Assembly: GCA_013416795.1 (NCBI GenBank)
Contig: RQSC01000030.1
Location: forward strand, 1-49,590
Reading direction: 5' to 3'
Source: Prasinococcaceae sp. CCMP 1430
Lineage: Eukaryota > Plantae > Prasinodermophyta
DNA length: 49,590 nt
A model generated the notes under the pieces. It was not told where the DNA came from. It saw nothing but the letters and a program-made list of their open reading frames with translations, and searched no databases. This document shows, in pieces, positions 1,431 to 44,385 of the stretch. A program made the translations under genes and the position numbers. Within the stretch, counting starts at the first letter, position 1; every line of letters starts with the position of its first letter.

Positions 1431-4400
1431 TCAACGAGCGCCGCGCGATGAAGCGCCGCTGCCACCGCTCGCAAGCGCTGCGACGGCATCCGCAATCCCG
1501 AAGGCGTTGCAGTAGTACGCGACGCCCACCGCCGCACTCGTCGCCGCCAACGCCAGCGCCTGTGATGAGCGCGAGGCGCCCTGCGTGCGCGCGAGATTCG
1601 CGCGCGCATCTGCAGCTTTGCCGGCGTCCTTATCAAACGAGCAAATGAAGTCGTGAATGAATTGCACATCGAACGCCGCCTCGCAGTACGCGAAGTAGAA
1701 GTCGTACTTGCGGATGAACTCGATCGGGTAGCCGAGCTCGAGCAGCTTCGACTCGTTGGCCAGCCAGCGCTTACGCCATTCCTGTGGAGGCAGACGCGAG
1801 CGAAAAGAGTGTGTCAGTCAATAAGTGGTTGTGCTCGCGAACTCTCACTTTCAGCCGCGTGAAGACAGCCGCCGGGTCGGAAGAGTGAGCGCAAGCGCAA
1901 GCGCGCACGCGCCAGCTGCTATTCGTACCCTGAGCGTGATCGCGTAGTCCTTGCCAATGTCGAGAGTCGCCGTGCGCGCCAGGCCATTGCGCGTGCACCA
2001 CTTGTCAAGCACATTGAGGCACGGCAGGTGGCCACCCGGGAAGATGTGCTCGCGGATGAAGTCCGAGCTCGCGCAATAGCTAGCGTAGTTTTGGTCCTTC
2101 ATCGAGATGACCTGCACCACGGCGCGGCCCCCGTCCTTGAGCAGCGCACCCAGACACCCGAAGTAGCTGGGCAGGTGCTCGTCACCAACCGCCTCGAGCA
2201 TCTCGCACGAGACAATGCGGTCAAACGAAGCCTTGCCCTCGGCGCCCTCGATGTGGCGGTAGTCCTGCAGACGGAACTCAACCAGGTGGTCCACGCCGGC
2301 GGCCTCGGCGCGCGCGCGCGCGACGGCGAGCTGCTCTTTGGACAGCGTGACACCGACCACGCGGCAGCCGATCCGCTGCGCGATGCGCACGCCCATGGAG
2401 CCCCAACCGCAGCCGATCTCAAGCACGCGGTGCGCGGGCAGCAGCCCGGCGCGGGCGATGATCTCATCGAGCTTGCGGAGCTGCGATAGCTCGAGCTCAT
2501 CATGGGCAGAGCTCTGGCCGGCGAGGCCGCCCTTCGCGAGGGAAGGCTTGTCAAATGGCCCACTGATAGGCCAGTGTCTCCTGGGCAGCTGCGCGAGCGT
2601 GCCCGTTTCTTCGTCAACAATGGGACTCGCTAGCCCCGGCGTTCCATCGCGGGCGGGCGCCGTGTCTGTGATGCCACTCGAGTACGTCATCGTGCGATCC
2701 AAGAAGAGCGCGTACATCGGATTGCCCGCATCGTAGTGGTACGAAATGTTGCGGCGGGAGTTTTCCACGGTGTTGGTGCGCGTGGCGTGGCGCAGGTGGG
2801 CCAGCGTGGCTCCCATCCACTGGAAGGCGCCCAGCACGCCGAGCGCGTCACGCGCGGCATCCGCATTGGCGGACATGACATTCATCAGATCGATCAGCGA
2901 GGGCGTCCAGATCTGGCCTTCAATGTACGCCTCGCCCAGGCCGATGTCAACCTCCTTGACGATGCGCACCAGTGCCTGCGCGTCGAGGACGCGCATGACG
3001 GCCGCCCACGGCGCGTCGGGGGTCGTTTCGCCAACGCTGAACTCGTGGCCGGTCGGAAGGATCACGCGCAGCGAGCCCTTCTTGATACACGTGCGGCAAA
3101 AGGCCTCGAAGAGCTGCTTGCAGCGCGCCTGCATGAAGTTCATGCGTGGGCTGAGGGAACGCGCAAGCACGCTACCCTCCCACGGCACGCTCGCGCCCAG
3201 GCCCTTGGCAGCGGCCATTCCGGCCTTGAGGCCGTCCTCGTGGAAGCCGTACCCGCACCACGCGCCCGCGAGCCACACGCCGCCCGTGCCATTCACGCGT
3301 GCTAGCGCCGCCTGCGCAGCGGGCGCGCGTTCGGTGAAGACGGGGTGATCCAAGCGCAAGCGGCGCAACACTTTGTCATCCGCCGGCGCGTGCGTCGGAT
3401 TGAGCGTACAGAAAAGGTCGCGCGTGCCCTCGGGGTAGTTTTGGAGGCGATTCAGCCAGTACGAGACGCACACGGCGCCCTTCGAGGCGGCGCCGTCGTT
3501 GGCACCAGCGCGCTCGAGACAGTTCCAGCTCGCCCAGCATTTCCTCGAGCGCGGCATGAGGCTCGCATCCGTGTGCAGGTACACGTCGTTCGACGAGTAG
3601 GGGATGTCGGAAAGGAGCGCCTTCTCGTCGGGCGTAGCGCCTGTGCCGGCTTCGAGCAGTCGCAGCGACACGTCGGTGTGCGTCGCGAGGACGCACGCGT
3701 CGAACGCGCGCGTCTCTGCGGCGCCGCCCGCGCGGCGGCACGTGAGCTTCACGCCGGTGTCACCCGACGCGGAGCGGCTCACGCTCTCGACCGAGACGCC
3801 CGTGTGGACGCTGTCGGCCGGGAGCTCGGCCCTGATGGCCTTGACGTACTCGCGGCTGCGCCCCTTCACCACGCGCCAGAGCGGCCGCTCGGTGAGCGAG
3901 AGCAGGTGGTGGTTCACCCAGAAGCGCACGAGCATGCGCACGGGGAAGCGCAGTACCTGCGCGTTGGGCGCCGACCAGATGGAGGCGCACATGGGCAGCA
4001 GGTAGCGATACGTGAAGACCTCGGAGTAGCCTTCCGCCTTGAGGTAGTCGCCGAGCGTCGCCTCGGCGTACTTCGATCCGTCCTGAAGCACGCGCGGCGC
4101 GGCGGCGTTGAAGCGCAGGACGTCGGCGAGCATGCGCCAGTGCAGCGGGTCGAGCGCGGTGCGCAGCGTCGGAAAGACGCTGCCGAGGCCGTGGCTCGCC
4201 CACTCGACGGCGCCCCCGACGACGCTCAGCGCGAAGCTCATGTCGCTCTCCTCGCTGTCCACGCCGAGCTCCTCCAGCAGCCCCACCATGTTGGGATAGT
4301 TGGTCAGGTTGAACACCTGAAAGCCGAGGTCTGCGGGCACGCCCGCGGCGTCATCGGTGAGCGTGTGCCCCCCGAGCACCTCTTCGCGTTCAAAGAGCTC

Positions 4401-4619
4401 CACGTCGTGCCCCGCGCGATGCAGCAGCCACGCCGCGCTCAGCCCGGAGATGCCGGCGCCGACGACGGCGACCGAGCGGCATCCATCGGCGGGGCCTGCG
4501 GCAGCAGCGCTCCCCCCGGCGGCGGCGCTGCCACCCGTGGCCGTGGAGCGCGACGCCGCTGCGGCGGCAATCTCCGCGGGCGTCACGTTGTGGCTCCCCT
4601 TGCCCTCGCCCTTGCCCAT
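1431..4619 (-). CDS. FAD-dependent amine-oxidase-like domain fused to cyclopropane-fatty-acyl-phospholipid synthase (SAM methyltransferase); exons 4619-1929 and 1781-1431
   Basis: N-terminal GAGISGLSAA Rossmann motif, DLGFQVFN and YGFHEDGL. C-terminal NISYHYDAGN, VLEIGCGWG, VGVTLSKEQ, FIREHIFPGG. Intron 1928-1782 (GTACGA...CACAG, 147 nt) restores TLR|EWRKRW...FIRKYDFYFAYCEAAF. ATG at 4619. Confidence 0.9.
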
Positions 4620-4691
4620 GGCTGCCGGCGCGCACCCGCGGCCCCCTCGCGAGGACTTCGGGCAGCGCCGCGGCACGCCCGCGCCCGCCCC

Positions 4692-26544: not shown

Positions 26545-26787
26545 NNNNNNNNNNNNNNNNNNNNNNNNNNNNNNNNNNNNNNNNNNNNNNNNNNNNNNNN
26601 NNNNNNNNNNNNNNNNNNNNNNNNNNNNNNNNNNNNNNNNNNNNNNNNNNNNNNNNNNNNNNNNNNNNNNNNNNNNNNNNNNNNNNNNNNNNNNNNNNNN
26701 NNNNNNNNNNNNNNNNNNNNNNNNNNNNNNNNNNNNNNNNNNNNNNNNNNNNNNNNNNNNNNNNNNNNNNNNNNNNNNNNNNNNNNN
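26545..26787. other. Assembly gap of 243 N (other gaps: 37731-37819, 39179-39196, 43950-44231)
   Basis: Seen directly. Confidence 1.
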
Positions 26788-36385: not shown

Positions 36386-37730
36386 TCAGCGCGCCAGCTT
36401 GGTGCAGAACGCGTCGATGCGGTCGAAGGCCTCGTTGAGCTTCTCGTCCGGCGCGCACACGACGATGCGTGCGAAGCCCGGCGCTGCGAAGGCCGCGCCC
36501 GGCAGAAGCACGACGCCCTCCTCGGCGAGCAGCCTCTGGCAGAAGGCGGTGTCGTCGGCGATGCCCGCCTTGGCGAGGAAGTCGGCGTCGACCCGCACGA
36601 AGAGGTACATCGCCCCCTGCGGTTGCGTGGTCACGCGCAGCGCGCGGCTGGGCATGGCCTCAACGCGGGCGGCGCACAGCGCCGCGCGAGCGCGCAGCGT
36701 CTCGCACGTGTCGGCGAAGAACTCCTCGGGCGTCTCGGCGATAATGCGTGGCAGCGCCGCCTGCACGGGGTGGGCCGTGCCGATGGTGATCTGCGCCATG
36801 CGCTGCAGCGCGAGGACGACCTCGTGCTCGCGCAGCACCCTTTCCGGCGAGTCGTGCACGTTGAGCCAGCCCAGCCGCCAGCCCGGCGCCAGCCAGAGCT
36901 TGGAGAGCGCCCCCACGGAGATGACCGGGCAGCCGCCGCGCACGGCCGCGATGGGCGTGTACGCGTCCCTGCCGTCAAACGCCATGCCCGCGTACACCTC
37001 GTCGGCCACGATGGGCACGCGGGCGTCCTCGCAGAGCGCGCAGAGCTCGCGCAGGTGAGCCTTGCTGTACACGCTGCCTGTCGGGTTGCCCGGGTTGTTG
37101 ACCATCAGGCACGCCGCGCGGTCGCCCAGCGATGCGATGGTCTCGCGCAGCTTGGGTAGGTCGGCCTCCCACCCGCGCTCGGGCAGCAGGTCGTAGTACA
37201 CGGTTTCCGCGCCGACGAAGTCGGCCAGCGTGGCGTACAGCGGGAAGCACGGGCGCGGGAGCAGCACCGCGGACCGCCCGCCGTCCGTGAGCGCCGTCAG
37301 CGCCATCTGCAGCGCCTGCGAGCAGCCGACGGTGATGATCGTCTCATCGGGCCGGAGCGGCTCATCGCCGGGAATGGCGCCGAAGCTGCGCGCGACGGCG
37401 TCGCGCGCGGCCGCCGTGCCACTCGACTCGGCGTAGCCGTCGCCCAGGCCATCGCGGACGGCGTCGGCGAGCGCCGCGCGCGCCTGCGGCGGCGGGCCGA
37501 GCCCCGGGAACGCCGTCGGGTCGCCCTGCGACAGCGAGATGAGCGGCTTGCCCTCGGGCGGCTTGGCCTCCTGTGGCGGCGTGAGGACCGGCGCGCGCGG
37601 TCGCGCCGGATGGGAACGGCGCGAGGCCGGATGGGGGGAAGGGCGGGGGGGTCGAGGGCGTCAGGGGGCGAGTGCGCGCGCCCGGCCGCCGCCGCGCGCC
37701 GGCAGCAGTCGCACATCCGCGCCTCGCGCG
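36386..37730 (-). CDS. TAT: PLP-dependent tyrosine/nicotianamine aminotransferase-like (class I/II); 5'-partial at N gap; intron 37714-37571
   Basis: KPLISLSQGDPT, GYAESSG, TVGCSQAL, LLPRPCFPLY, NNPGNPTGSVY, IVADEVY and GALSKLWLAPGWRLGW (PLP lysine), EEGVVLLPG. Confidence 0.92.
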
Positions 37731-38070
37731 NNNNNNNNNNNNNNNNNNNNNNNNNNNNNNNNNNNNNNNNNNNNNNNNNNNNNNNNNNNNNNNNNNNNNN
37801 NNNNNNNNNNNNNNNNNNNCGGCGCACCGGGCGCGCGCGTGGCGCCGCGCGGCGGCGCGCAACCAACGCCGCAAGGGGCCAACCAAAACATGTACCCACG
37901 GGCGAGCAATTCAATCTTCGGTGCATCCATTGCATCGGATCGGTCGCTGTCGTATCGGTGCTTCCCCAACGTGGCGTTTGGTTTGGAGTGACCTCCTATG
38001 AAAACGCATGGCGGCGCGGAGCGCGCGCGCCCGGCGGATCGGAAGGCTCCTCGCGGTGCCCGGGAGGGGA

Positions 38071-38346
38071 TTATAATCTCCATGCGCGTTGATATGTGTC
38101 CCAAAATTCGTCGGACTTGATCTCGTCCTCGTCGTGCCGTGGTAGGTCACAGCAAAGCGGCCGGCCTCTCTTCCCTCTGTACAGCTTCGTTGTACGTTGT
38201 GCCACGAGTTGAGAGTCACAGAAGTCCCACTGAGGCCGCTGCAGCCGGCACTGCGATAGCCAGTGGCGGAGCCACTGGCACTCAAAACCTCGGTTGTACT
38301 GGGCCACCAGCACGGGGCGGGCGCCCCGTGCTAGGGGTTCGATCCC
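38071..38346 (-). pseudogene. Relic resembling the Exo II region of a DEDDh 3'-5' exonuclease
   Basis: PVLVAQYNRGFECQWL...C....PQWDFCDS resembles VLVAHN..FD..FL...C...P.W...DS. It is bounded by stops, has no ATG, and the catalytic H/N/D positions are altered. Confidence 0.35.
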
Positions 38347-38378
38347 TCACGCTGGGTAGGTAGTCGTTTGTTGGTCCT

Positions 38379-38621
38379 ATGGAGAACCTAACTCCTGAGC
38401 ACAGGGCTGAGCGCCGTGAAGCAAGCGCCGCGGGCATGCGGGCATTTTGGAAGAACCTCACGCCTCATGAGAGGGCGAAGGTCTTCGAAAAGGCGTAGGC
38501 GAAGAAGGTTGTCTGGTGGGAAAACCTCCGGGACGATGAGAAGGAGGCGATCTTCAGGAAGAATGCAGAAAGCAATAGAAAGAGATTGCAGGGCCGGGGG
38601 GGGGCGGGGGGGGGAGCATAG
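38379..38621 (+). pseudogene. ORF relic with three 23-aa repeats (W.NL[T/R]P/D.E[R/K]) interrupted by an in-frame TAG
   Basis: ATG 38379, TAG at 38496-38498 (codon 40), frame resumes to TAG 38619-38621. The 69-nt period is seen directly. Confidence 0.5.
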
Positions 38622-39196
38622 GCAAATAAAGCGTAGGAGTTTTAAGTTACTCGGCAAGCTTTCGTGAGGCTGTCAGGCAGGGCCGGGCGGCCGCACACTT
38701 GGCAGACCCAGCTCGCCGCGCGGGTGTTCATCTCCCGCTCTGTCGGCCGAATTCTCTCTCTGCAGGCCGGCAGCTCCAGTGTGTCGTGGGCGGCGGCGAT
38801 GAGCCCTATCTCCGCCCAGATCACAGCTTGCAGCCGTTGGAGCGCCAGTTGGGCGCGCTCAACGTCCGCGAGCGTCTCTTAATATGTTGTGAATGATGGC
38901 ACACGCTTGGAACACAAAATGAATATGAAAAAAAGAGAGAGGTAAACGGACGGTCTCGTGGGGCAGCTCAATCGACTGTGACGTCCGATGGATTGTTGGC
39001 ATCTATTTCGCACATTGCAATTTGGAACTACCACGACCGCTTTTTATCGTATTTGAAAGCACTCTTTTCATGGTGCGCAAGGGTCCAATTCGGGCGACCA
39101 ATTGGAGATTCGATCGACGTCGGGCCGGGCTCGCTCGCGCGGCGCGAGCGGCCGCGCGGCGCCACAGGCGCGTGCGGCNNNNNNNNNNNNNNNNNN

Positions 39197-42100
39197 TCCT
39201 GGGCGCGCGTGCGCGTCGCCTTCTGCGGCGCGTGCGGATCGGACGCGGCCGAGTGCGCGTGCGCGTGGACGGGAGGGGCGCCGCCTGAGCTGCCGCTCGT
39301 GCCCGGCCACGAGATCGTGGGCATGGTCGAGGAGGCTCCCGGCGACGCGCCGGCCTGGGCCGCCCGCGGCGCGTGGGTGGGCGTCGGGTGCATGGTCGCG
39401 TCGTGCGGCAGCTGCCGGCGGTGCTCGCGCGGGGAGGAGCAGTTCTGCAATCGCGTGGCGTGGACGTACGGCTCGCGGCTCGACGACGACGGCGAGGGCG
39501 CCTGCAGCGATGCCAGCGGTGACAAACCCGCGGCACGCGCGCGCACCACGGGCGGCTTCGCGACCCACGTCGTCGCCGACGTGCGCTTCCTCGTGCCGCT
39601 ACCGGAGGCGGCGTGCGCGTCGCCCTCCGCGCTCGCCGCGACGGCGCCGCTGCTGTGCGCCGGCGCGACCGCGTACTCGGCCCTGAAGGCGCAGGGGCTG
39701 CTCGACGCGGGCAGCGGACGACGCGCGGCGGTGGTGGGCCTCGGCGGCGTTGGCCACCTCATGGTGCGCCTGCTCGCCTCCGTGCGTGGGGCAGACGCCG
39801 TGGCCGTCGTGTCGCGCGCACGCGCGAAGGAGGCCGAGGCGCGGGCCCTCGGCGCGGGCGAGTTCATCGAGCTGGGCGGCGAAACGAGCCCGTCCGCTGG
39901 CACCTTTGACGTGGTGTTCGACACCGCATCGGGCGACCACGACGTGGAGGCGCTGCTCGAACTCCTCGACGTCGGCGGCACGCTCGTCCAGGTGGGCCTG
40001 CCCCCGGGGGGTCTCACGCTGTCGCCCTTCGCGCTGCCCGCGCGGCGCCTGTCCGTGCAGGGCACCTTCATCGCGGGCGTCGCGGAGACTGCCGAGGCGG
40101 TGCGCGAATTCGTGTCGCGTGGCATCCTGCCCAGCGTCGACGTGATCCCAGCCACCGCGGAGACCGCGTCGGAGGTGCTCCGCCTCCTCTCGTGCGGGGA
40201 GGGTGGCGCCAGGCGCTACGTCCTCGACATGGCGCCGCTGCATGAGGTCCACGGCGCGAACGAGCTCAGAGCGGCGACCGGGGCGCCGTGGCACGACGGT
40301 GCGCGTGCTCGAGCCCTGGGCGTCTGCCGCGGCGTGCGCGGCTCGCTCTGGCCCGCAGGCGGCGCGGACAGCGTTCACGAGGCCTTCTTCCGGGCGGCCG
40401 AGCGCTGGCCCGACGCCCCGGCACTGGCATCGCCGCTCGAGGCGCGAATGACATACCGCGAGTTGGCCGCGAGCGCGCGAGCGCTCGCCGCGCACTTGCG
40501 CGAGGTCGCGGGCGGTCGCTTGGCGGTGGCCGCTGCCGCGGGGCGCACGCCCGTGGCTGCGTGCATGTTGCCCTCCTGCGGCGTGCGGATTTGCGCCTAC
40601 TTTGCGACGCTCGCTGCTGGTCTGGCGTACTGCCCGATCGAAATCGGCCATCCTGAGGCCACCGCGAGGACGCTGCTCGCCGCCGTCGACGCGACTGTGT
40701 TCGTCGCCGCGCCCTCGCTTGCGTCCCTCGCGCCAGAGGGCATTCCGACCGTGGCGCTCACCTGGGAGAGCGTGGAAGGTCTCCGTGGCGGCGCGGCGCT
40801 CCCGCCTCCCGCGAGCAACGCTGTCGCGCACGTGGTGTTCACGAGCGGCTCAACCGGCACGCCCAAAGGCGTCGTGTGTGCGCACGCGGGCTCACTCGCC
40901 TCGCATGCGTGGCGACACGCGCTGCAGCCCTACAGGCCAGGCGACGTGGTGGCGAGCTGCATCTTCGGCATTTGGGACGCCGTCGGTGCGCTGCTGCACG
41001 GCGCGTCGGTGGCGCCTGTCGCCGAGGAGACGCTGCGGTCGCCGCGCGTTTTGGGACTCTTCATGCTGCGCGCGCGCTGCAACCGCATCATGATCACCCC
41101 GTCGCTGCTCGGCCACGCGCTGTGTGACACGGTGTGCTTGGCAGCGCTGCGCGCCTGCACGGCGGTCGTCACGTGTGGCGAGCCGCTCCCACAGACGATG
41201 GCTGCGCAGGCCATGAGCGCGCTCTCAGATGACGGCTGCGGTGCATCTGAAGGGCGCAGCCTGATGAATCTATACTCGTGCGCCGAAACGCACGATGTCG
41301 CAGCGGAAGTCGCCCGGCTCAGCGGCGCCGTGGGCGCCGCAGAAGTGACCAGCACTGCAGAGCGCCTCGCCACTGTCGGCGTGGTGGCACCGCACGCCGA
41401 AGTTCTCGTGATGCGGTCGTTGGAACCACCAGTGCTGGCAGGCGTTGGCGAGGAGGGCGAGGTGGTCGTCACCGGCGATCTCACACTCGCGAGCGGCTAC
41501 TACAACCAGGACGACGGAGGCGTGAGCGCCAAAGGGCGCTTCTTCGACCTGGACGGCGTACGGGCGTATTCCACGGGTGATCGCGGCGCGCTCCGCGAAG
41601 ACGGCCGACTGGCCATTAGCGGCCGCGACGAGCAAACCGCGGTGGCGAACGTGCGAGGTCACACAGTGTCGCTGCTGGACGTCGAGCACGCGCTGCGCGC
41701 GGTGGGAGCGCTGCAGGCCGTGGCCGCCGTCGCGCCCGACGCGAAGGGCCGCGACGTTGTCGTCGCGCTCGTGCCACCCGGGGTCGAACCGCCTGCGGAG
41801 GAGCTCCTTGCGCGCCTCAAGACTGAGGGCACGCTACCATCTGCGGCGATGCCAGCGCGCGTGCTCGTGACGGACAGCCCGCTCGTGTCGAGTGCCTCGG
41901 GCAAGGCCGACCGCACCGCCGCGCGCGCGCTGGCCGCGAAGATGCTGAAGAGCGAGGCGGCGCTCTCACGCGGCGCGCTCAACGGCGCGCCCGAGGCGAC
42001 GTCGAGCGAGGGGGAGCTCGCCGAGGCTGTGCGTTGCGCCATCGTCGACGAGCTGGGCTGTGACGCTGGGCTGGACTCGGACTTTTTTGAGCTGGGAGGG

Positions 42101-43510
42101 GACAGCCTGTCGGCCGTGGCCATGCTGGGGGCGCTGTCAAAGCGCGTGGGCGACGAGAGCGTCGACCGCATGAGCTGGGACGAATTTGCGGCGTGCCCCA
42201 CTCCCCGCGGCATCGCGCGCTTGCTCTCGCGCGCCGATGCGGCCGGCTCCGCCGGCGCGAGCGTGCGCGCCAGTGAGGTCATCGGTGATGTGGAGAGGCT
42301 GGCGCTGCGCGTGCGGGCACGCGTCGACGACGCCGCGTCGGCATCCGCCGGCGCGGTGGAGGCAACGTCGGACAGCAAGACGGTCCTCGTGCTGGGCGCG
42401 GCGGGGCTCATCGGCGGCCACGTTGTGAGCTGCTTCCTGCGGCACGGCTATGCCGTCATGGGGTTGGCGCGCGCGCCCGACGCAGCGGCGTGCAGGGCAC
42501 GCGTGCTTGGCAATCTCGAGCGGCTCGCGCTGCTCGAGGAGGCCGAGCCCTTCCTCGCGCGCCTCCAGTGCGTGCCCGGCAACCTCATTGGGCTGCGCGA
42601 GAGCGCCGCATGGGAGGAGCTGCTGCGCGCCGGCGTCGCGGTGGTCGTCAATTGCGCCGGATGCGCGTCGATGGCGGCGTCGTACGCCGAGCTGTCAGCG
42701 GCAAACGTAGAGGGCGCGGCGCTCGCGTGGGAGCTCGCCGCCACGGTCGGGGCCCAGCTGCACCACATCTCGTCGTCTGTGGTCTTCCCCCCGCGTGTGA
42801 CGCCGTACCTCGACAGCGAGCTGCCGCGCCTCGATCACCTCGAGGGCGGCTACGCGATGTCCAAGTGGGGCGCTGAGGCAGTGCTGGTCAAGCTGTCTCT
42901 CGACAACCCGCGGGCGGCGCCGCCGCAGGCCATCCTTCACCGCGTGGGGAATGTGCGCCCCGCGCGGACGGCGGCGCGGGAGGACGCCGACGGCGCGGCG
43001 GCGGTCATGAGTGCGTGCGTGGCGCTTGGCGCCTTCCCGGAGGGCCTCGCCGCCACGTGGGAGTGCGCGGGCCGCCTGGCGAAGGGCATCCTCGCGGTGA
43101 GCCTGCGAGGCGTCGGCAGCAGCAGAGGCCGCAGCACGTACGGCGCGGGTCCGCCCGTGCGCGTTGTTCACCATTCGACGGCCGAGCGCGTGCGCGGAGA
43201 GGACCTGATGGCCGCGCTTCATGCCGCGGGCCACCCGCGCGTCGTGAGGCTCCCCGCCGAAGCCTGGGCAGCGCTGGTGCGCTCTGCCGTCGCCGAGCAC
43301 CAGAGCGACCGTGCGGGGGCGCCCGGCTGCCCGCGCGCGCTCGCCATCACAGCCTCCCTGCTCCGTGCGGGCGGTGGCGGCGCGGTCGGCGTGGCGGGCG
43401 CCATCGGCGCGCGCGACGCAAGCGTCGACGGCCAGAGCGACGCCGTCGCCGAGGGCAGCGTGCTGGCCCTCGCCGAGCGCTGGCGGAGCGGCGGCCTGCT
43501 CGCGCCCTGA
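39197..43510 (+). CDS. NRPS-like multidomain reductase: CAD-type Zn alcohol dehydrogenase - adenylation - thiolation - thioester reductase (ADH-A-T-R); 5' end at or just before the 18-N gap
   Basis: ADH: CGACGSD, PGHEIVG, Cx2Cx2Cx7C, LLCAG, GLGGVG. A: MTYREL, FTSGSTGTPKG, YSTGD, SGKADR. T: FFELGGDSL. R: VLGAAGLIG, NVEG, HISS, YAMSK. No stop between domains. Confidence 0.9.
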   Translation, partial: SWARVRVAFCGACGSDAAECACAWTGGAPPELPLVPGHEIVGMVEEAPGDAPAWAARGAWVGVGCMVASCGSCRRCSRGEEQFCNRVAWTYGSRLDDDGEGACSDASGDKPAARARTTGGFATHVVADVRFLVPLPEAACASPSALAATAPLLCAGATAYSALKAQGLLDAGSGRRAAVVGLGGVGHLMVRLLASVRGADAVAVVSRARAKEAEARALGAGEFIELGGETSPSAGTFDVVFDTASGDHDVEALLELLDVGGTLVQVGLPPGGLTLSPFALPARRLSVQGTFIAGVAETAEAVREFVSRGILPSVDVIPATAETASEVLRLLSCGEGGARRYVLDMAPLHEVHGANELRAATGAPWHDGARARALGVCRGVRGSLWPAGGADSVHEAFFRAAERWPDAPALASPLEARMTYRELAASARALAAHLREVAGGRLAVAAAAGRTPVAACMLPSCGVRICAYFATLAAGLAYCPIEIGHPEATARTLLAAVDATVFVAAPSLASLAPEGIPTVALTWESVEGLRGGAALPPPASNAVAHVVFTSGSTGTPKGVVCAHAGSLASHAWRHALQPYRPGDVVASCIFGIWDAVGALLHGASVAPVAEETLRSPRVLGLFMLRARCNRIMITPSLLGHALCDTVCLAALRACTAVVTCGEPLPQTMAAQAMSALSDDGCGASEGRSLMNLYSCAETHDVAAEVARLSGAVGAAEVTSTAERLATVGVVAPHAEVLVMRSLEPPVLAGVGEEGEVVVTGDLTLASGYYNQDDGGVSAKGRFFDLDGVRAYSTGDRGALREDGRLAISGRDEQTAVANVRGHTVSLLDVEHALRAVGALQAVAAVAPDAKGRDVVVALVPPGVEPPAEELLARLKTEGTLPSAAMPARVLVTDSPLVSSASGKADRTAARALAAKMLKSEAALSRGALNGAPEATSSEGELAEAVRCAIVDELGCDAGLDSDFFELGGDSLSAVAMLGALSKRVGDESVDRMSWDEFAACPTPRGIARLLSRADAAGSAGASVRASEVIGDVERLALRVRARVDDAASASAGAVEATSDSKTVLVLGAAGLIGGHVVSCFLRHGYAVMGLARAPDAAACRARVLGNLERLALLEEAEPFLARLQCVPGNLIGLRESAAWEELLRAGVAVVVNCAGCASMAASYAELSAANVEGAALAWELAATVGAQLHHISSSVVFPPRVTPYLDSELPRLDHLEGGYAMSKWGAEAVLVKLSLDNPRAAPPQAILHRVGNVRPARTAAREDADGAAAVMSACVALGAFPEGLAATWECAGRLAKGILAVSLRGVGSSRGRSTYGAGPPVRVVHHSTAERVRGEDLMAALHAAGHPRVVRLPAEAWAALVRSAVAEHQSDRAGAPGCPRALAITASLLRAGGGGAVGVAGAIGARDASVDGQSDAVAEGSVLALAERWRSGGLLAP

Positions 43511-44385
43511 GCCGGCGAGTCCGAGCCGCCCACGCGCATGTGCCCCTCCGCCACCGCGGCGCCGCGCCCCTTCGCTTCGTGGTGCCAACGAACGGGCCGC
43601 CGCGTGCGTTGTGATGTACATAATGTGAATTGACATGCGTACGATATTAGTATGTTTTACATTCGCGGTCGATTGTCTCTGCGCTTTGATGTGAGATCTC
43701 TTCACATTTTGCGTGACGTCTCAGAGTGCGTCCCAATGCAAAACGAAGAGAGATTTTCGCGATGCGTGGGATCCGTGATGGCATGGGAACGTTGGTTGGG
43801 GCGAAGAGATCTTGCGACGCCGCGCGCGCGCGCGGGCTGGCGAGGGTGCGGCACACGCCGCGCGCGCGGCCCCCGCCTGGCGCGTCCCGAGGGGACGGGC
43901 GTCGCGAGGGGGCGTCAGCGGGGCGCGGGGGCGCGATGCTAGTAATAGCNNNNNNNNNNNNNNNNNNNNNNNNNNNNNNNNNNNNNNNNNNNNNNNNNNN
44001 NNNNNNNNNNNNNNNNNNNNNNNNNNNNNNNNNNNNNNNNNNNNNNNNNNNNNNNNNNNNNNNNNNNNNNNNNNNNNNNNNNNNNNNNNNNNNNNNNNNN
44101 NNNNNNNNNNNNNNNNNNNNNNNNNNNNNNNNNNNNNNNNNNNNNNNNNNNNNNNNNNNNNNNNNNNNNNNNNNNNNNNNNNNNNNNNNNNNNNNNNNNN
44201 NNNNNNNNNNNNNNNNNNNNNNNNNNNNNNNCCGCCCCCTCTCTCTCCCCCCCGGCCCGACTCCCGGCCACCACCCCCTGCCACTTCACCCACCTCGGCG
44301 CCCTCGCGCGCGCGCGCCGCCGCACGACCTGCTGCAGCGCAGATCTCCTCCTTTTTTTCCATTTCTCCGCCTTTTTTTTTTTGGA

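What the first reader, a model, noticed from the sequence alone, without database searches (positions are those of the whole stretch)
39197..43510. ADH-A-T-R: a single-polypeptide acid-to-alcohol reduction line with a CAD-type dehydrogenase fused to a carboxylic-acid-reductase module
Seen: one stop-free frame holds a complete MDR Zn-ADH (catalytic Cys 39233, GHE 39305, structural Cys 39404/39413/39422/39446, Cys 39656, GLGGVG, S-R after beta-2 suggesting NADPH). It then holds an A domain (A3 40838, TGD about 41573, A10 Lys 41903), a carrier Ser (GGDSL, 42104) and an SDR thioester reductase (YAMSK 42851), with no condensation domain. Known: A-T-R enzymes (bacterial CAR, fungal Lys2) release aldehydes, and fungal ATRR adds a second SDR to reach the alcohol. 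I do not know a characterised case using an N-terminal MDR/CAD domain. Inference: 4-electron reduction with aldehyde channelling, chemically mirroring 4CL-CCR-CAD of monolignol synthesis in one chain.
Basis: partly seen in the sequence, partly recalled or inferred. Interest (0 to 1): 0.88.

Follow-up and report, generated by a model that had tools for sequence, protein, structure and literature searches.

The report
Alga's fused acid-to-alcohol reductase enzyme
A marine green alga (Prasinoderma coloniale) encodes one long, expressed protein that joins a zinc alcohol dehydrogenase to an acid-activating and acid-reducing module; it most likely turns a carboxylic acid into an alcohol, like the known ATRR enzymes but with a different, unrelated second reductase at the opposite end.

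Summary
Window 39197-43510 (+) is one stop-free frame encoding a Zn-ADH, an adenylation domain (A), a carrier domain (T) and a thioester reductase (R). The true start codon and about 64 N-terminal codons lie in an 18-N assembly gap (39179-39196). The genome is the alga Prasinoderma coloniale. The gene shows strong purifying selection in all parts, uniform GC3 and intron-free transcript contigs across the ADH-A junction.

The A-T-R part is not a bacterial-type CAR. Its A domain falls in the eukaryotic ATRR clade, whose characterised members are A-T-R1-R2 enzymes: glycine betaine to choline in Aspergillus, and L-tryptophan to tryptophanol in a diatom. Here the C-terminal SDR R2 is absent, and an N-terminal YahK/Ahr/CAD-type NADPH aldehyde reductase stands in for it.

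Thioester-reductase proteins are fused to this ADH type in at least three other lineages, always with the ADH C-terminal. That supports coupled four-electron reduction.

The monolignol analogy is not supported. The substrate is unknown, probably a carboxylate carrying a cationic group. I rate this a new variant of a known kind, uncharacterised, found so far only in Prasinoderma.

The parts
39179..39196 (.). Assembly gap (18 N). It hides about 360 nt that hold the annotated ATG and about 64 N-terminal codons of the gene.
   Evidence: L001 509-875 (367 nt) has no counterpart in the window; the annotated protein P0124 (PRCOL_00005982-RA, 1505 aa) extends 64 aa upstream. ATG is present in L009, CTG in L001.
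39197..40234 (+). Zn-dependent medium-chain ADH domain of the YahK/Ahr/CAD subfamily, probably an NADPH aldehyde reductase. It carries a disordered insertion of about 20 aa, roughly at 39680-39740.
   Evidence: Pfam. PDB sequence hits YahK 1uuf 4.9e-44, SAD 1yqd, CAD 2cf5. All Zn ligands, the glycine motif and the 2'-phosphate Lys are conserved in a 35-sequence alignment. AF2 pLDDT 82, and Foldseek target-normalised TM-score about 0.9 to NADP(H)-bound CAD-family structures.
40235..40372 (+). Linker of about 45 aa between ADH and A, in frame and without a stop. It is predicted as a helix followed by disorder.
   Evidence: GC3 0.83-0.90. 2 synonymous: 1 non-synonymous change against L001. Transcript contigs cover 39872-40348 and 40228-40382 with no joint. 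AF2 pLDDT is below 50 after residue 429 of P0124.
40373..41935 (+). NRPS-type adenylation domain of the ATRR-like clade. Motifs A1-A10 are present. A4 reads CIFGIWD (no Asp235 equivalent), A5 reads NLYSCAETHDV, and the A10 Lys is at 41903.
   Evidence: Pfam, PDB, tree, motif table, BLASTP to the ATRR-type P0136 at 1e-60.
42026..42226 (+). Carrier (thiolation) domain with the phosphopantetheine Ser in GGDSL at 42104.
   Evidence: Pfam PP-binding 2.4e-08. The Ser is invariant in alignments.
42374..43397 (+). SDR-type thioester reductase (R) domain with GAAGLIG nucleotide motif, SSS and YAMSK (Tyr at 42851), plus its C-terminal subdomain.
   Evidence: Pfam NAD_binding_4 1.2e-16. TIGR01746 scores 87 bits, below its cut-off. 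It aligns end to end with P0143 and with ATRR R1.
43398..43510 (+). Low-complexity C-terminal tail and stop codon. It contains a 12-nt in-frame indel near 43421 relative to P0124 and L001. There is no remnant of an R2 SDR.
   Evidence: The downstream ORFs have no Pfam hit.

Best explanation
This is a four-domain enzyme (ADH-A-T-R) of Prasinoderma coloniale that reduces a free carboxylic acid to the primary alcohol with ATP and two NADPH. Proposed steps, all inferred from homology: the A domain adenylates the acid and loads it on the phosphopantetheine arm of T. R reduces the thioester and releases an aldehyde. The N-terminal Zn-ADH domain then reduces the aldehyde to the alcohol. In evolutionary terms it is a member of the eukaryotic ATRR-like A-T-R lineage (characterised members: Aspergillus ATRR, glycine betaine to choline; diatom PtNRPS1, L-tryptophan to tryptophanol). 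It lacks the usual C-terminal SDR aldehyde reductase (R2) and carries instead a non-homologous YahK/Ahr/CAD-type aldehyde reductase at the other end. The substrate is unknown. The pocket keeps the clade's Phe, Trp and acidic residue, which bind the cationic group in both characterised enzymes. It has Gly for the second Phe and Val for Trp270/Phe285, so the substrate is probably a larger or different carboxylate bearing an amino, ammonium or sulfonium group, and the product an amino or onium alcohol.
For: Shown: the gene is one frame, intron-free and transcribed. Transcript contigs lie on both sides of the junction and across it, at similar depth, and the flanks are silent. Selection is purifying (38 synonymous: 9 non-synonymous) and GC3 is uniform. 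The published annotation models it as one 1505-aa protein. All catalytic motifs are intact in ADH, A, T and R.

Kinship with ATRR: BLASTP to a dinoflagellate A-T-R-SDR protein gives 28% identity over 955 aa, 1e-60. That protein carries the published cage residues at a constant +4 offset (F205, W208, W274, E308 against F201, W204, W270, E304). In the A-domain tree the query and its nearest relative P0143 fall in a clade with the ATRR-type proteins, split from canonical NRPS A domains at 98/97 and 100/100. The clade also shares a short A4 loop, the F-x-[VI]-W-[ED] motif and the YSxxE-x-x-[DE] A5 motif.

Function of the second reductase: in ATRR, R1 stops at the aldehyde and R2 is a dedicated aldehyde reductase. 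Diatom homologues without R2 exist, as does the algal relative P0143 (A-T-R only).

Rosetta-stone support: 24 bacterial protein clusters are A-T-R-ADH, with CAR model 1170 bits plus Ahr model 295 bits. T-R-ADH and R-ADH proteins also exist. In the ADH tree these fused ADHs form separate lineages. CAR plus Ahr is the pair used to engineer acid-to-alcohol conversion.
Against: No activity was measured and the substrate is unknown. The ADH is N-terminal, unlike every other fusion found, so the domain order does not mirror the proposed reaction order. The ADH has Gly in place of the near-invariant His of the CH[ST]D motif and a disordered insertion of about 20 aa. The R domain scores below NCBI's thioester-reductase cut-off. 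Some R domains reduce all the way to the alcohol on their own, which would make the ADH redundant. A 26-nt hole (40383-40408) in the listed transcript pieces leaves an internal start formally possible. The A-domain tree has only 28 rows, chosen from hits, and six rows including the query have deviant composition. No fungal ATRR or PtNRPS1 sequence was available to include.
Confidence: 0.6

Rival explanations
1. The ADH domain is fused but not coupled to the A-T-R product. It would act as a general NADPH aldehyde or ketone reductase on other substrates, with the fusion serving co-expression or localisation only.
For: YahK/Ahr-type enzymes are broad-range aldehyde reductases. The ADH is at the opposite end from R, separated by a disordered linker. 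The closest relative P0143 works without a fused reductase.
Against: Fusion of this ADH type to thioester-reductase proteins recurs in at least four separate lineages, which is hard to explain without functional coupling. The characterised relatives need a second reductase. The whole chain is under purifying selection.
Confidence: 0.15
2. The ADH domain acts before adenylation, matching its N-terminal position. For example, it might reduce an oxo group or oxidise an alcohol or aldehyde on the precursor. The A-T-R part would then release an aldehyde as the final product.
For: Domain order ADH-A-T-R. Some CAD-family members are ketone reductases (4oaq, 7c2o). A tyrosine-aminotransferase-like gene that would supply aryl 2-oxo acids lies head-to-head upstream.
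Against: All other natural fusions place the ADH directly after R. The A pocket keeps the acidic residue that binds a cationic group in the characterised relatives, not a 2-oxo or 2-hydroxy acid signature. The adjacency to the aminotransferase may be chance in a eukaryotic genome.
Confidence: 0.1
3. One reading: an aryl-acid (hydroxycinnamate-like) reductase, a one-chain counterpart of 4CL-CCR-CAD that makes monolignol-like alcohols.
For: Plant SAD and CAD are among the best structural and sequence matches of the ADH. The diatom relative PtNRPS1 also adenylates salicylates. The host is a deep-branching green-lineage alga.
Against: Bacterial YahK matches as well or better. In the tree the ADH is not inside the plant and green-algal CAD clade (83/91 for the grouping with bacterial YahK-type enzymes, on a long branch). 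The A domain is unrelated to 4CL or CAR-type aryl-acid activators.
Confidence: 0.07
4. The fusion is an artefact: a mis-join, or two genes read through by assembly error, or the ADH part is untranslated because the start is defective.
For: The 5' end lies in an assembly gap. In the TARA scaffold the annotated ATG is CTG and there is no other upstream in-frame ATG. A 26-nt hole remains in the listed transcript pieces.
Against: Three independent assemblies (window, L001, L009) and transcript contigs from two separate studies (runs X1 and X2) show the same open frame. Selection is purifying in the ADH part (5 synonymous: 2 non-synonymous) and the linker. GC3 is uniform. ATG is present in L009 and in the annotated model.
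Confidence: 0.05

Closest known systems
[quoted passage not shown]
   Same: It is a single module without a C domain. It has an NRPS-type A domain lacking Asp235, and the pocket Phe (F201), Trp (W204) and acidic residue (E304; Asp here) are kept. An SDR thioester reductase makes the aldehyde and an additional fused NADPH aldehyde reductase finishes the alcohol. The A domains share a clade and clade-specific A4 and A5 motifs.
   Different: The second reductase here is a Zn-dependent MDR (YahK/Ahr/CAD type), not a YdfG-like SDR, and it is N-terminal rather than C-terminal. Trp270 is Val and Phe202 is Gly. Identity to an ATRR-type protein is only 28%. The substrate is unknown and probably not glycine betaine.
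Phaeodactylum tricornutum PtNRPS1, domains A-T-R1-R2, L-tryptophan to tryptophanol (PMC13194791)
   Same: It is an algal member of the same lineage with the same NVFFVW-type A4 motif and the acidic pocket residue (Glu319). It performs a four-electron reduction of an acid bearing a cationic nitrogen. Diatom homologues lacking R2 exist, as does the relative P0143 found here.
   Different: PtNRPS1 has R2 (SDR) at the C-terminus and Phe285 where this protein has Val.
Bacterial carboxylic acid reductase (CAR, NF041592) paired with the aldehyde reductase Ahr/YjgB or YahK, and the uncharacterised natural A-T-R-ADH fusions (P0122, P0123 and about 22 further clusters)
   Same: The same three chemistries occur in one chain, and the fused ADH belongs to the same subfamily. 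This gives independent support that the ADH type partners with thioester reductases.
   Different: The A domain is CAR-type, not NRPS/ATRR-type. The T-R parts are only 22% identical. The ADH is C-terminal, the hosts are bacterial, and the fusion events are separate.
Plant cinnamyl and sinapyl alcohol dehydrogenases (2cf5, 1yqd, 5vkt)
   Same: Same fold, both Zn sites and the NADP(H) site (Foldseek target-normalised TM-score about 0.9).
   Different: Identity is about 30%. This ADH is not nested in the plant and green-algal clade, and no link to phenylpropanoid substrates has been shown.

Membership tests
ATRR-like NRPS-like reductases (A-T-R1-R2) | A-T-R core with an NRPS-type A domain that lacks the Asp235 equivalent | tested here: met
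   Pfam. A4 reads CIFGIWD, so Asp235 aligns to Ile or to a gap.
ATRR-like NRPS-like reductases (A-T-R1-R2) | A domain groups with ATRR-type A domains and shares their A4 (F-x-[VI]-W-[ED]) and A5 (YSxxE-x-x-[DE]) motifs | tested here: met
   IQ-TREE split 98/97 and 100/100. Motif table. BLASTP 1e-60 over 955 aa. Caveat: 28 rows, with no fungal ATRR or PtNRPS1 sequence included.
ATRR-like NRPS-like reductases (A-T-R1-R2) | Complete betaine cage F201, W204, W270, E304 | tested here: not met
   Phe, Trp and an acidic residue (Asp) are kept, but W270 is Val and F202 is Gly.
ATRR-like NRPS-like reductases (A-T-R1-R2) | C-terminal YdfG-like SDR aldehyde reductase (R2) | tested here: not met
   There is no adh_short hit. 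The tail after R is about 80 low-complexity residues, and the downstream ORFs have no Pfam hit.
ATRR-like NRPS-like reductases (A-T-R1-R2) | Two sequential NADPH reductions of the acid to the alcohol | not testable with these tools
   This needs an enzyme assay.
Bacterial carboxylic acid reductase (EC 1.2.1.30, NF041592) | Full-length match to the CAR equivalog model, including the CAR-type A domain | tested here: not met
   48.6 bits against a cut-off of 1300, and over T-R only. The best PDB A-domain matches are NRPS modules. T-R is 22% identical to P0122.
Zn-dependent MDR, YahK/Ahr/CAD subfamily | Catalytic Zn ligands (Cys, His-Glu, Cys) and four structural-Zn Cys | tested here: met
   C77, H102, E103, C218 and C134/137/140/148 (P0124 numbering) are invariant columns in a 35-sequence alignment.
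Zn-dependent MDR, YahK/Ahr/CAD subfamily | Rossmann GLGGxG motif and NADP(H) determinants (Ser/Thr after beta-2, and the conserved Lys) | tested here: met
   G245, G247, G248, G250 and K275 are conserved, and the motif reads VVSRARAKE. The best structural matches are NADP(H) complexes. Cofactor preference itself was not measured.
Zn-dependent MDR, YahK/Ahr/CAD subfamily | Complete fold | tested here: met
   AF2 pLDDT 82, pTM 0.83. Foldseek target-normalised TM-score 0.87-0.91 to 7cgu, 5vkt, 1yqd and 1uuf.
Aldehyde reductase Ahr (NF047908 equivalog) | Score above NCBI's equivalog cut-off | tested here: not met
   126.5 bits against a cut-off of 470. The similarity is at subfamily level only.
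Plant monolignol CAD clade | Phylogenetic placement within plant and green-algal CADs | tested here: inconclusive
   It is placed outside that clade, with bacterial YahK-type rows (83/91). However, the branch length is 3.9 and the composition is deviant.
Thioester reductase (SDR, NAD_binding_4 / TIGR01746) | GxxGxxG motif, Ser/Thr and the YxxxK catalytic residues | tested here: met
   GAAGLIG, SSS and YAMSK are present. Pfam scores 61 bits against a cut-off of 20.1. TIGR01746 scores 87 bits against 213, which is below its cut-off.

The most novel reading that the evidence does not exclude
An R2-less member of the ATRR lineage in the deepest-branching green-plant lineage independently captured an unrelated Zn-MDR aldehyde reductase at its N-terminus. 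It would use this to make a so far unknown amino or onium alcohol, for example an analogue of tryptophanol or tyrosinol, or a choline/sulfocholine-type head group derived from a betaine or sulfonium acid. Such a product could have a signalling or lipid-head-group role in marine picoplankton. Together with the bacterial A-T-R-ADH proteins, this would show that one-chain acid-to-alcohol reductases evolved repeatedly with interchangeable second reductases.
Probability: 0.2. Interest if true: 0.75.

Novelty: new variant of a known kind. Interest (0 to 1): 0.55.

Why it matters
Natural one-chain enzymes that take a free acid to the alcohol are rare. ATRR and PtNRPS1 are the only characterised cases I found.

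This protein shows that the second reductase can be swapped for a different fold and moved to the other end of the chain. Bacteria have independently built CAR-Ahr fusions, which are also uncharacterised.

That interests biocatalysis, where CAR plus Ahr is a standard engineered pair. It also bears on how multidomain enzymes are assembled.

In addition, the characterised relatives make choline from glycine betaine and a growth-active amino alcohol in diatoms. The product of this enzyme may therefore matter for the metabolism or signalling of a widespread marine picoalga whose transcripts occur in ocean metatranscriptomes.

Tried and rejected
1. P0131/L009 first looked like a 79%-identical orthologue from a second species. 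blastn shows a low-coverage (0.7x), frameshift-ridden assembly of essentially the same organism, 94.5% nt identity and syntenic. I did not count it as an independent orthologue.

2. The genome-contig scan, using the R-end plus ADH of the bacterial fusions, returned only stand-alone YahK-like ADHs among the 80 loci kept. It says nothing about how frequent the fusion is.

3. The ESM Atlas searches gave only plain A-T-R clusters (whole protein) or stand-alone A domains (A domain alone). No ADH-bearing cluster of 50 or more members turned up, and otherwise the results were uninformative.

4. The first whole-protein homology search was swamped by multimodular NRPSs. Region-limited searches and a T-R search of 1.84 billion representatives were needed.

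5. My first anchoring of the specificity code on 'FG' as Phe234-Asp235 was wrong. Anchoring on the conserved Trp239 and on the clade alignment corrected it.

6. Membership in bacterial CAR and in the Ahr equivalog was tested and rejected.

7. I considered a biosynthetic link to the head-to-head tyrosine-aminotransferase-like gene. I kept it only as a lead, because there is no evidence beyond adjacency.

8. The search of earlier findings returned nothing that bears on this locus.

Full report
**What is there.** The window is eukaryotic. Its long ORFs encode AP-2 alpha-adaptin, an IBR RING protein, a BRCT/FHA protein, a UAA transporter and malic enzyme. A near-identical protein in the public collection is labelled Prasinoderma coloniale PRCOL_00005982-RA in EukProt (P0124, 1505 aa). 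ORF 38978..43510 (+) is stop-free for 1510 codons. Pfam finds ADH_N, ADH_zinc_N, AMP-binding, PP-binding and NAD_binding_4 in that order and no condensation domain. A TARA Oceans metagenome scaffold (L001, 97.8% identical over 4760 nt) and a second, noisy assembly (L009) have about 360 nt there. Those bases contain the annotated ATG and about 64 N-terminal codons. The ADH domain is therefore complete in the organism, although its first strands are missing from the window.

**Is it a real, single gene?** GC3 is 0.72-0.95 in this frame in every 180-nt bin, including the ADH-A linker, while the flanks show no periodicity. Against L001 there are 38 synonymous and 9 non-synonymous differences: ADH 5:2, linker 2:1, A 14:5, T 1:1, R 16:0. 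There is also one 12-nt in-frame indel in the tail. Contigs from two runs of the same organism (listed as 'RNA?') lie on 39306-43307 with no mismatch and no splice joint. One piece spans 39872-40348, covering the end of the ADH and most of the linker, and the next starts at 40409. A marine metatranscriptome piece spans 40228-40382. Depth is similar on both sides and zero in the upstream and downstream flanks, which argues against DNA carry-over. A 26-nt hole (40383-40408) is not covered by the listed pieces, so an internal start is not formally excluded. In the TARA scaffold the annotated ATG reads CTG, while L009 has ATG.

**The ADH domain.** The closest solved structures by sequence are E. 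coli YahK (4.9e-44), aspen sinapyl alcohol dehydrogenase and Arabidopsis CAD5. The best NCBIfam model is the NADPH aldehyde reductase Ahr, far below its equivalog cut-off. In a 35-sequence alignment the following are all conserved: the catalytic Zn ligands (Cys, His-Glu, Cys), the four structural-Zn cysteines, the GLGGxG motif, and the Lys that contacts the 2'-phosphate in this subfamily. The near-invariant His of CH[ST]D is Gly here. There is an insertion of about 20 residues after the structural-Zn lobe. An AlphaFold model built on that alignment has pLDDT 82 and pTM 0.83. The insertion and the linker are disordered in the model. It superposes on NADP(H)-bound CAD-family structures at a target-normalised TM-score of about 0.9. 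In a maximum-likelihood tree the domain sits on a very long branch (3.9) with deviant composition. It is unresolved among bacterial YahK-type enzymes and lies outside the plant and green-algal CAD clade. 'CAD-type' is therefore right at the subfamily level, but nothing ties the domain to monolignol chemistry.

**The A-T-R part is not a CAR; it belongs with ATRR.** The CAR equivalog model scores 48.6 bits against a cut-off of 1300, and the best PDB matches are NRPS modules. A search of 1.84 billion representatives with T-R found only the protein itself and the noisy L009 copy above 36% identity. The lineage is therefore isolated. Among the weak hits, two proved informative:
- P0136 is a dinoflagellate protein with the ATRR architecture A-T-R-SDR. 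It aligns over 955 residues at 28% identity, E 1e-60. It carries F205, W208, W274 and E308, a constant +4 offset from the cage residues F201, W204, W270 and E304 published for Aspergillus ATRR.
- P0143 is a 1078-aa A-T-R protein on a 65.6%-GC eukaryotic (plastid-bearing) metagenome contig. It is 37% identical over 972 residues and shares the unusual motifs, and no ADH lies within 6 kb upstream.

An IQ-TREE analysis of 28 A domains places the query plus P0143 in a clade with the ATRR-type proteins. That clade is separated from canonical NRPS A domains at 98/97 and 100/100. The clade shares composition-independent characters: a shortened loop before A4, the motif F-x-[VI]-W-[ED] in place of FDxS-x-WE, and the A5 motif YSxxE-x-x-[DE].

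**What the characterised relatives do.**
- In Aspergillus ATRR, R1 stops strictly at the aldehyde and R2 is a dedicated aldehyde reductase. The net reaction is glycine betaine to choline.
- In the diatom PtNRPS1 (A-T-R1-R2), L-tryptophan is reduced to tryptophanol. The residue equivalent to Trp270 is Phe285, and Glu319 binds the amino group. Diatom homologues without R2 exist.
- ATRR homologues are transcribed by several marine protist groups.

**Pocket.** With Trp239 as anchor, the Prasinoderma code is approximately I/-, F, W, M, V, C, L, D, V, K. Compared with ATRR it keeps Phe201, Trp204 and the acidic residue (Asp for Glu304). It has Gly for Phe202 and Val for Trp270. P0143 has the same Phe, Gly, Trp and Asp, with Thr at the 270 position. 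In both characterised enzymes the acidic residue pairs with a cationic nitrogen. I therefore infer, but have not shown, a substrate carrying an amino, ammonium or sulfonium group in a roomier pocket than either known enzyme.

**Why the ADH is most likely the second reductase.** Region-limited searches for long proteins with this ADH type gave these results:
- 24 bacterial clusters of A-T-R-ADH, in two groups. One is from Pseudomonadales-like MAGs and the other from Saprospiraceae-like MAGs.
- A T-R-ADH protein from Tara data, and an R-ADH fragment.
- In all of these the ADH is C-terminal.

P0122 matches the CAR model over residues 11-1171 (1170 bits) and Ahr over 1191-1530 (295 bits). Its T-R is only 22% identical to the algal protein. 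In the ADH tree the fused ADHs form separate lineages, one of them nested among stand-alone bacterial enzymes. The same partnership therefore arose several times. CAR plus Ahr is also the pair engineers use to convert acids to alcohols. The Prasinoderma protein is the only case found with the ADH at the N-terminus, and the only one on an ATRR-type core.

**Comparison and novelty.** In function it resembles ATRR and PtNRPS1. In membership terms it meets the A-T-R core, the A-domain clade and the motif criteria. It fails two defining features: the SDR R2 and the complete betaine cage. It is not a CAR. Full-text searches found no description of an MDR fused to an A-T-R module, and none of this gene. 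I classify it as a new variant of a known kind: real, expressed and conserved within the species complex, but without a known substrate.

**Limits.**
- No enzymology was done.
- No fungal ATRR or PtNRPS1 sequence was available for direct alignment.
- The trees are small and include long, compositionally odd branches.
- The 5' end is not in the window.
- The transcript evidence comes from assembled contigs, not reads.

Noticed in passing
window 36386-37306 (-), probably extending to about 37935: A tyrosine-aminotransferase-like gene lies head-to-head with the ADH-A-T-R gene (mouse TAT 3pdx 4.2e-69; Pfam Aminotran_1_2 profile positions 85-361, so a 5' exon is missing from this ORF). The same order is kept in L009. 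The diatom relative PtNRPS1 uses an aromatic amino acid, so this could be a functional pair or could be chance.
   Followed up: partly
L001 683-685, equivalent to the window gap 39179-39196: The annotated start codon ATG (P0124, L009) reads CTG in the TARA scaffold. That scaffold has no other in-frame ATG upstream of the ADH domain. This could mean a non-AUG start, a strain defect or an assembly error.
   Followed up: partly
window 38010-38879: An 870-nt intergenic segment between the aminotransferase and the ADH-A-T-R gene is absent from L001. In L009 it is replaced by about 690 nt of unrelated sequence. It is not repeated elsewhere in the window. The shared promoter region is therefore strain-variable.
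   Followed up: partly
L002 10001-14602 (P0122); L005 10001-14599 (P0123): These are natural bacterial CAR-Ahr fusions (A-T-R-ADH, about 1530 aa). There are 24 clusters, annotated only as 'thioester reductase domain-containing' or 'FadD9'. They sit next to acyl-CoA dehydrogenase, thiolase and TetR genes. They appear uncharacterised and may be easier to study than the algal protein.
   Followed up: partly
L090 6111-9347 and 9566-10660: The nearest relative of the algal A-T-R (P0143, no ADH) is followed directly by a glutamine-synthetase-like gene. This is curious because the diatom homologue PtNRPS1 is reported to affect nitrogen assimilation.
   Followed up: no
window 43421 (codon 1409 of the in-window frame): There is a 12-nt in-frame deletion (the residues ALVP) relative to both the annotated protein P0124 and L001. 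The window therefore comes from a different assembly or strain than the published annotation.
   Followed up: no
window 1851-4676 (-): A 941-aa ORF fuses a flavin amine-oxidase domain to a cyclopropane-fatty-acyl-phospholipid-synthase (CMAS) methyltransferase domain.
   Followed up: no
window 26545-26787, 37731-37819, 43950-44231: There are further runs of N (243, 89 and 282 bases). L009 shows real sequence of a different length at some of these sites, so gene models near them are incomplete in the window.
   Followed up: no
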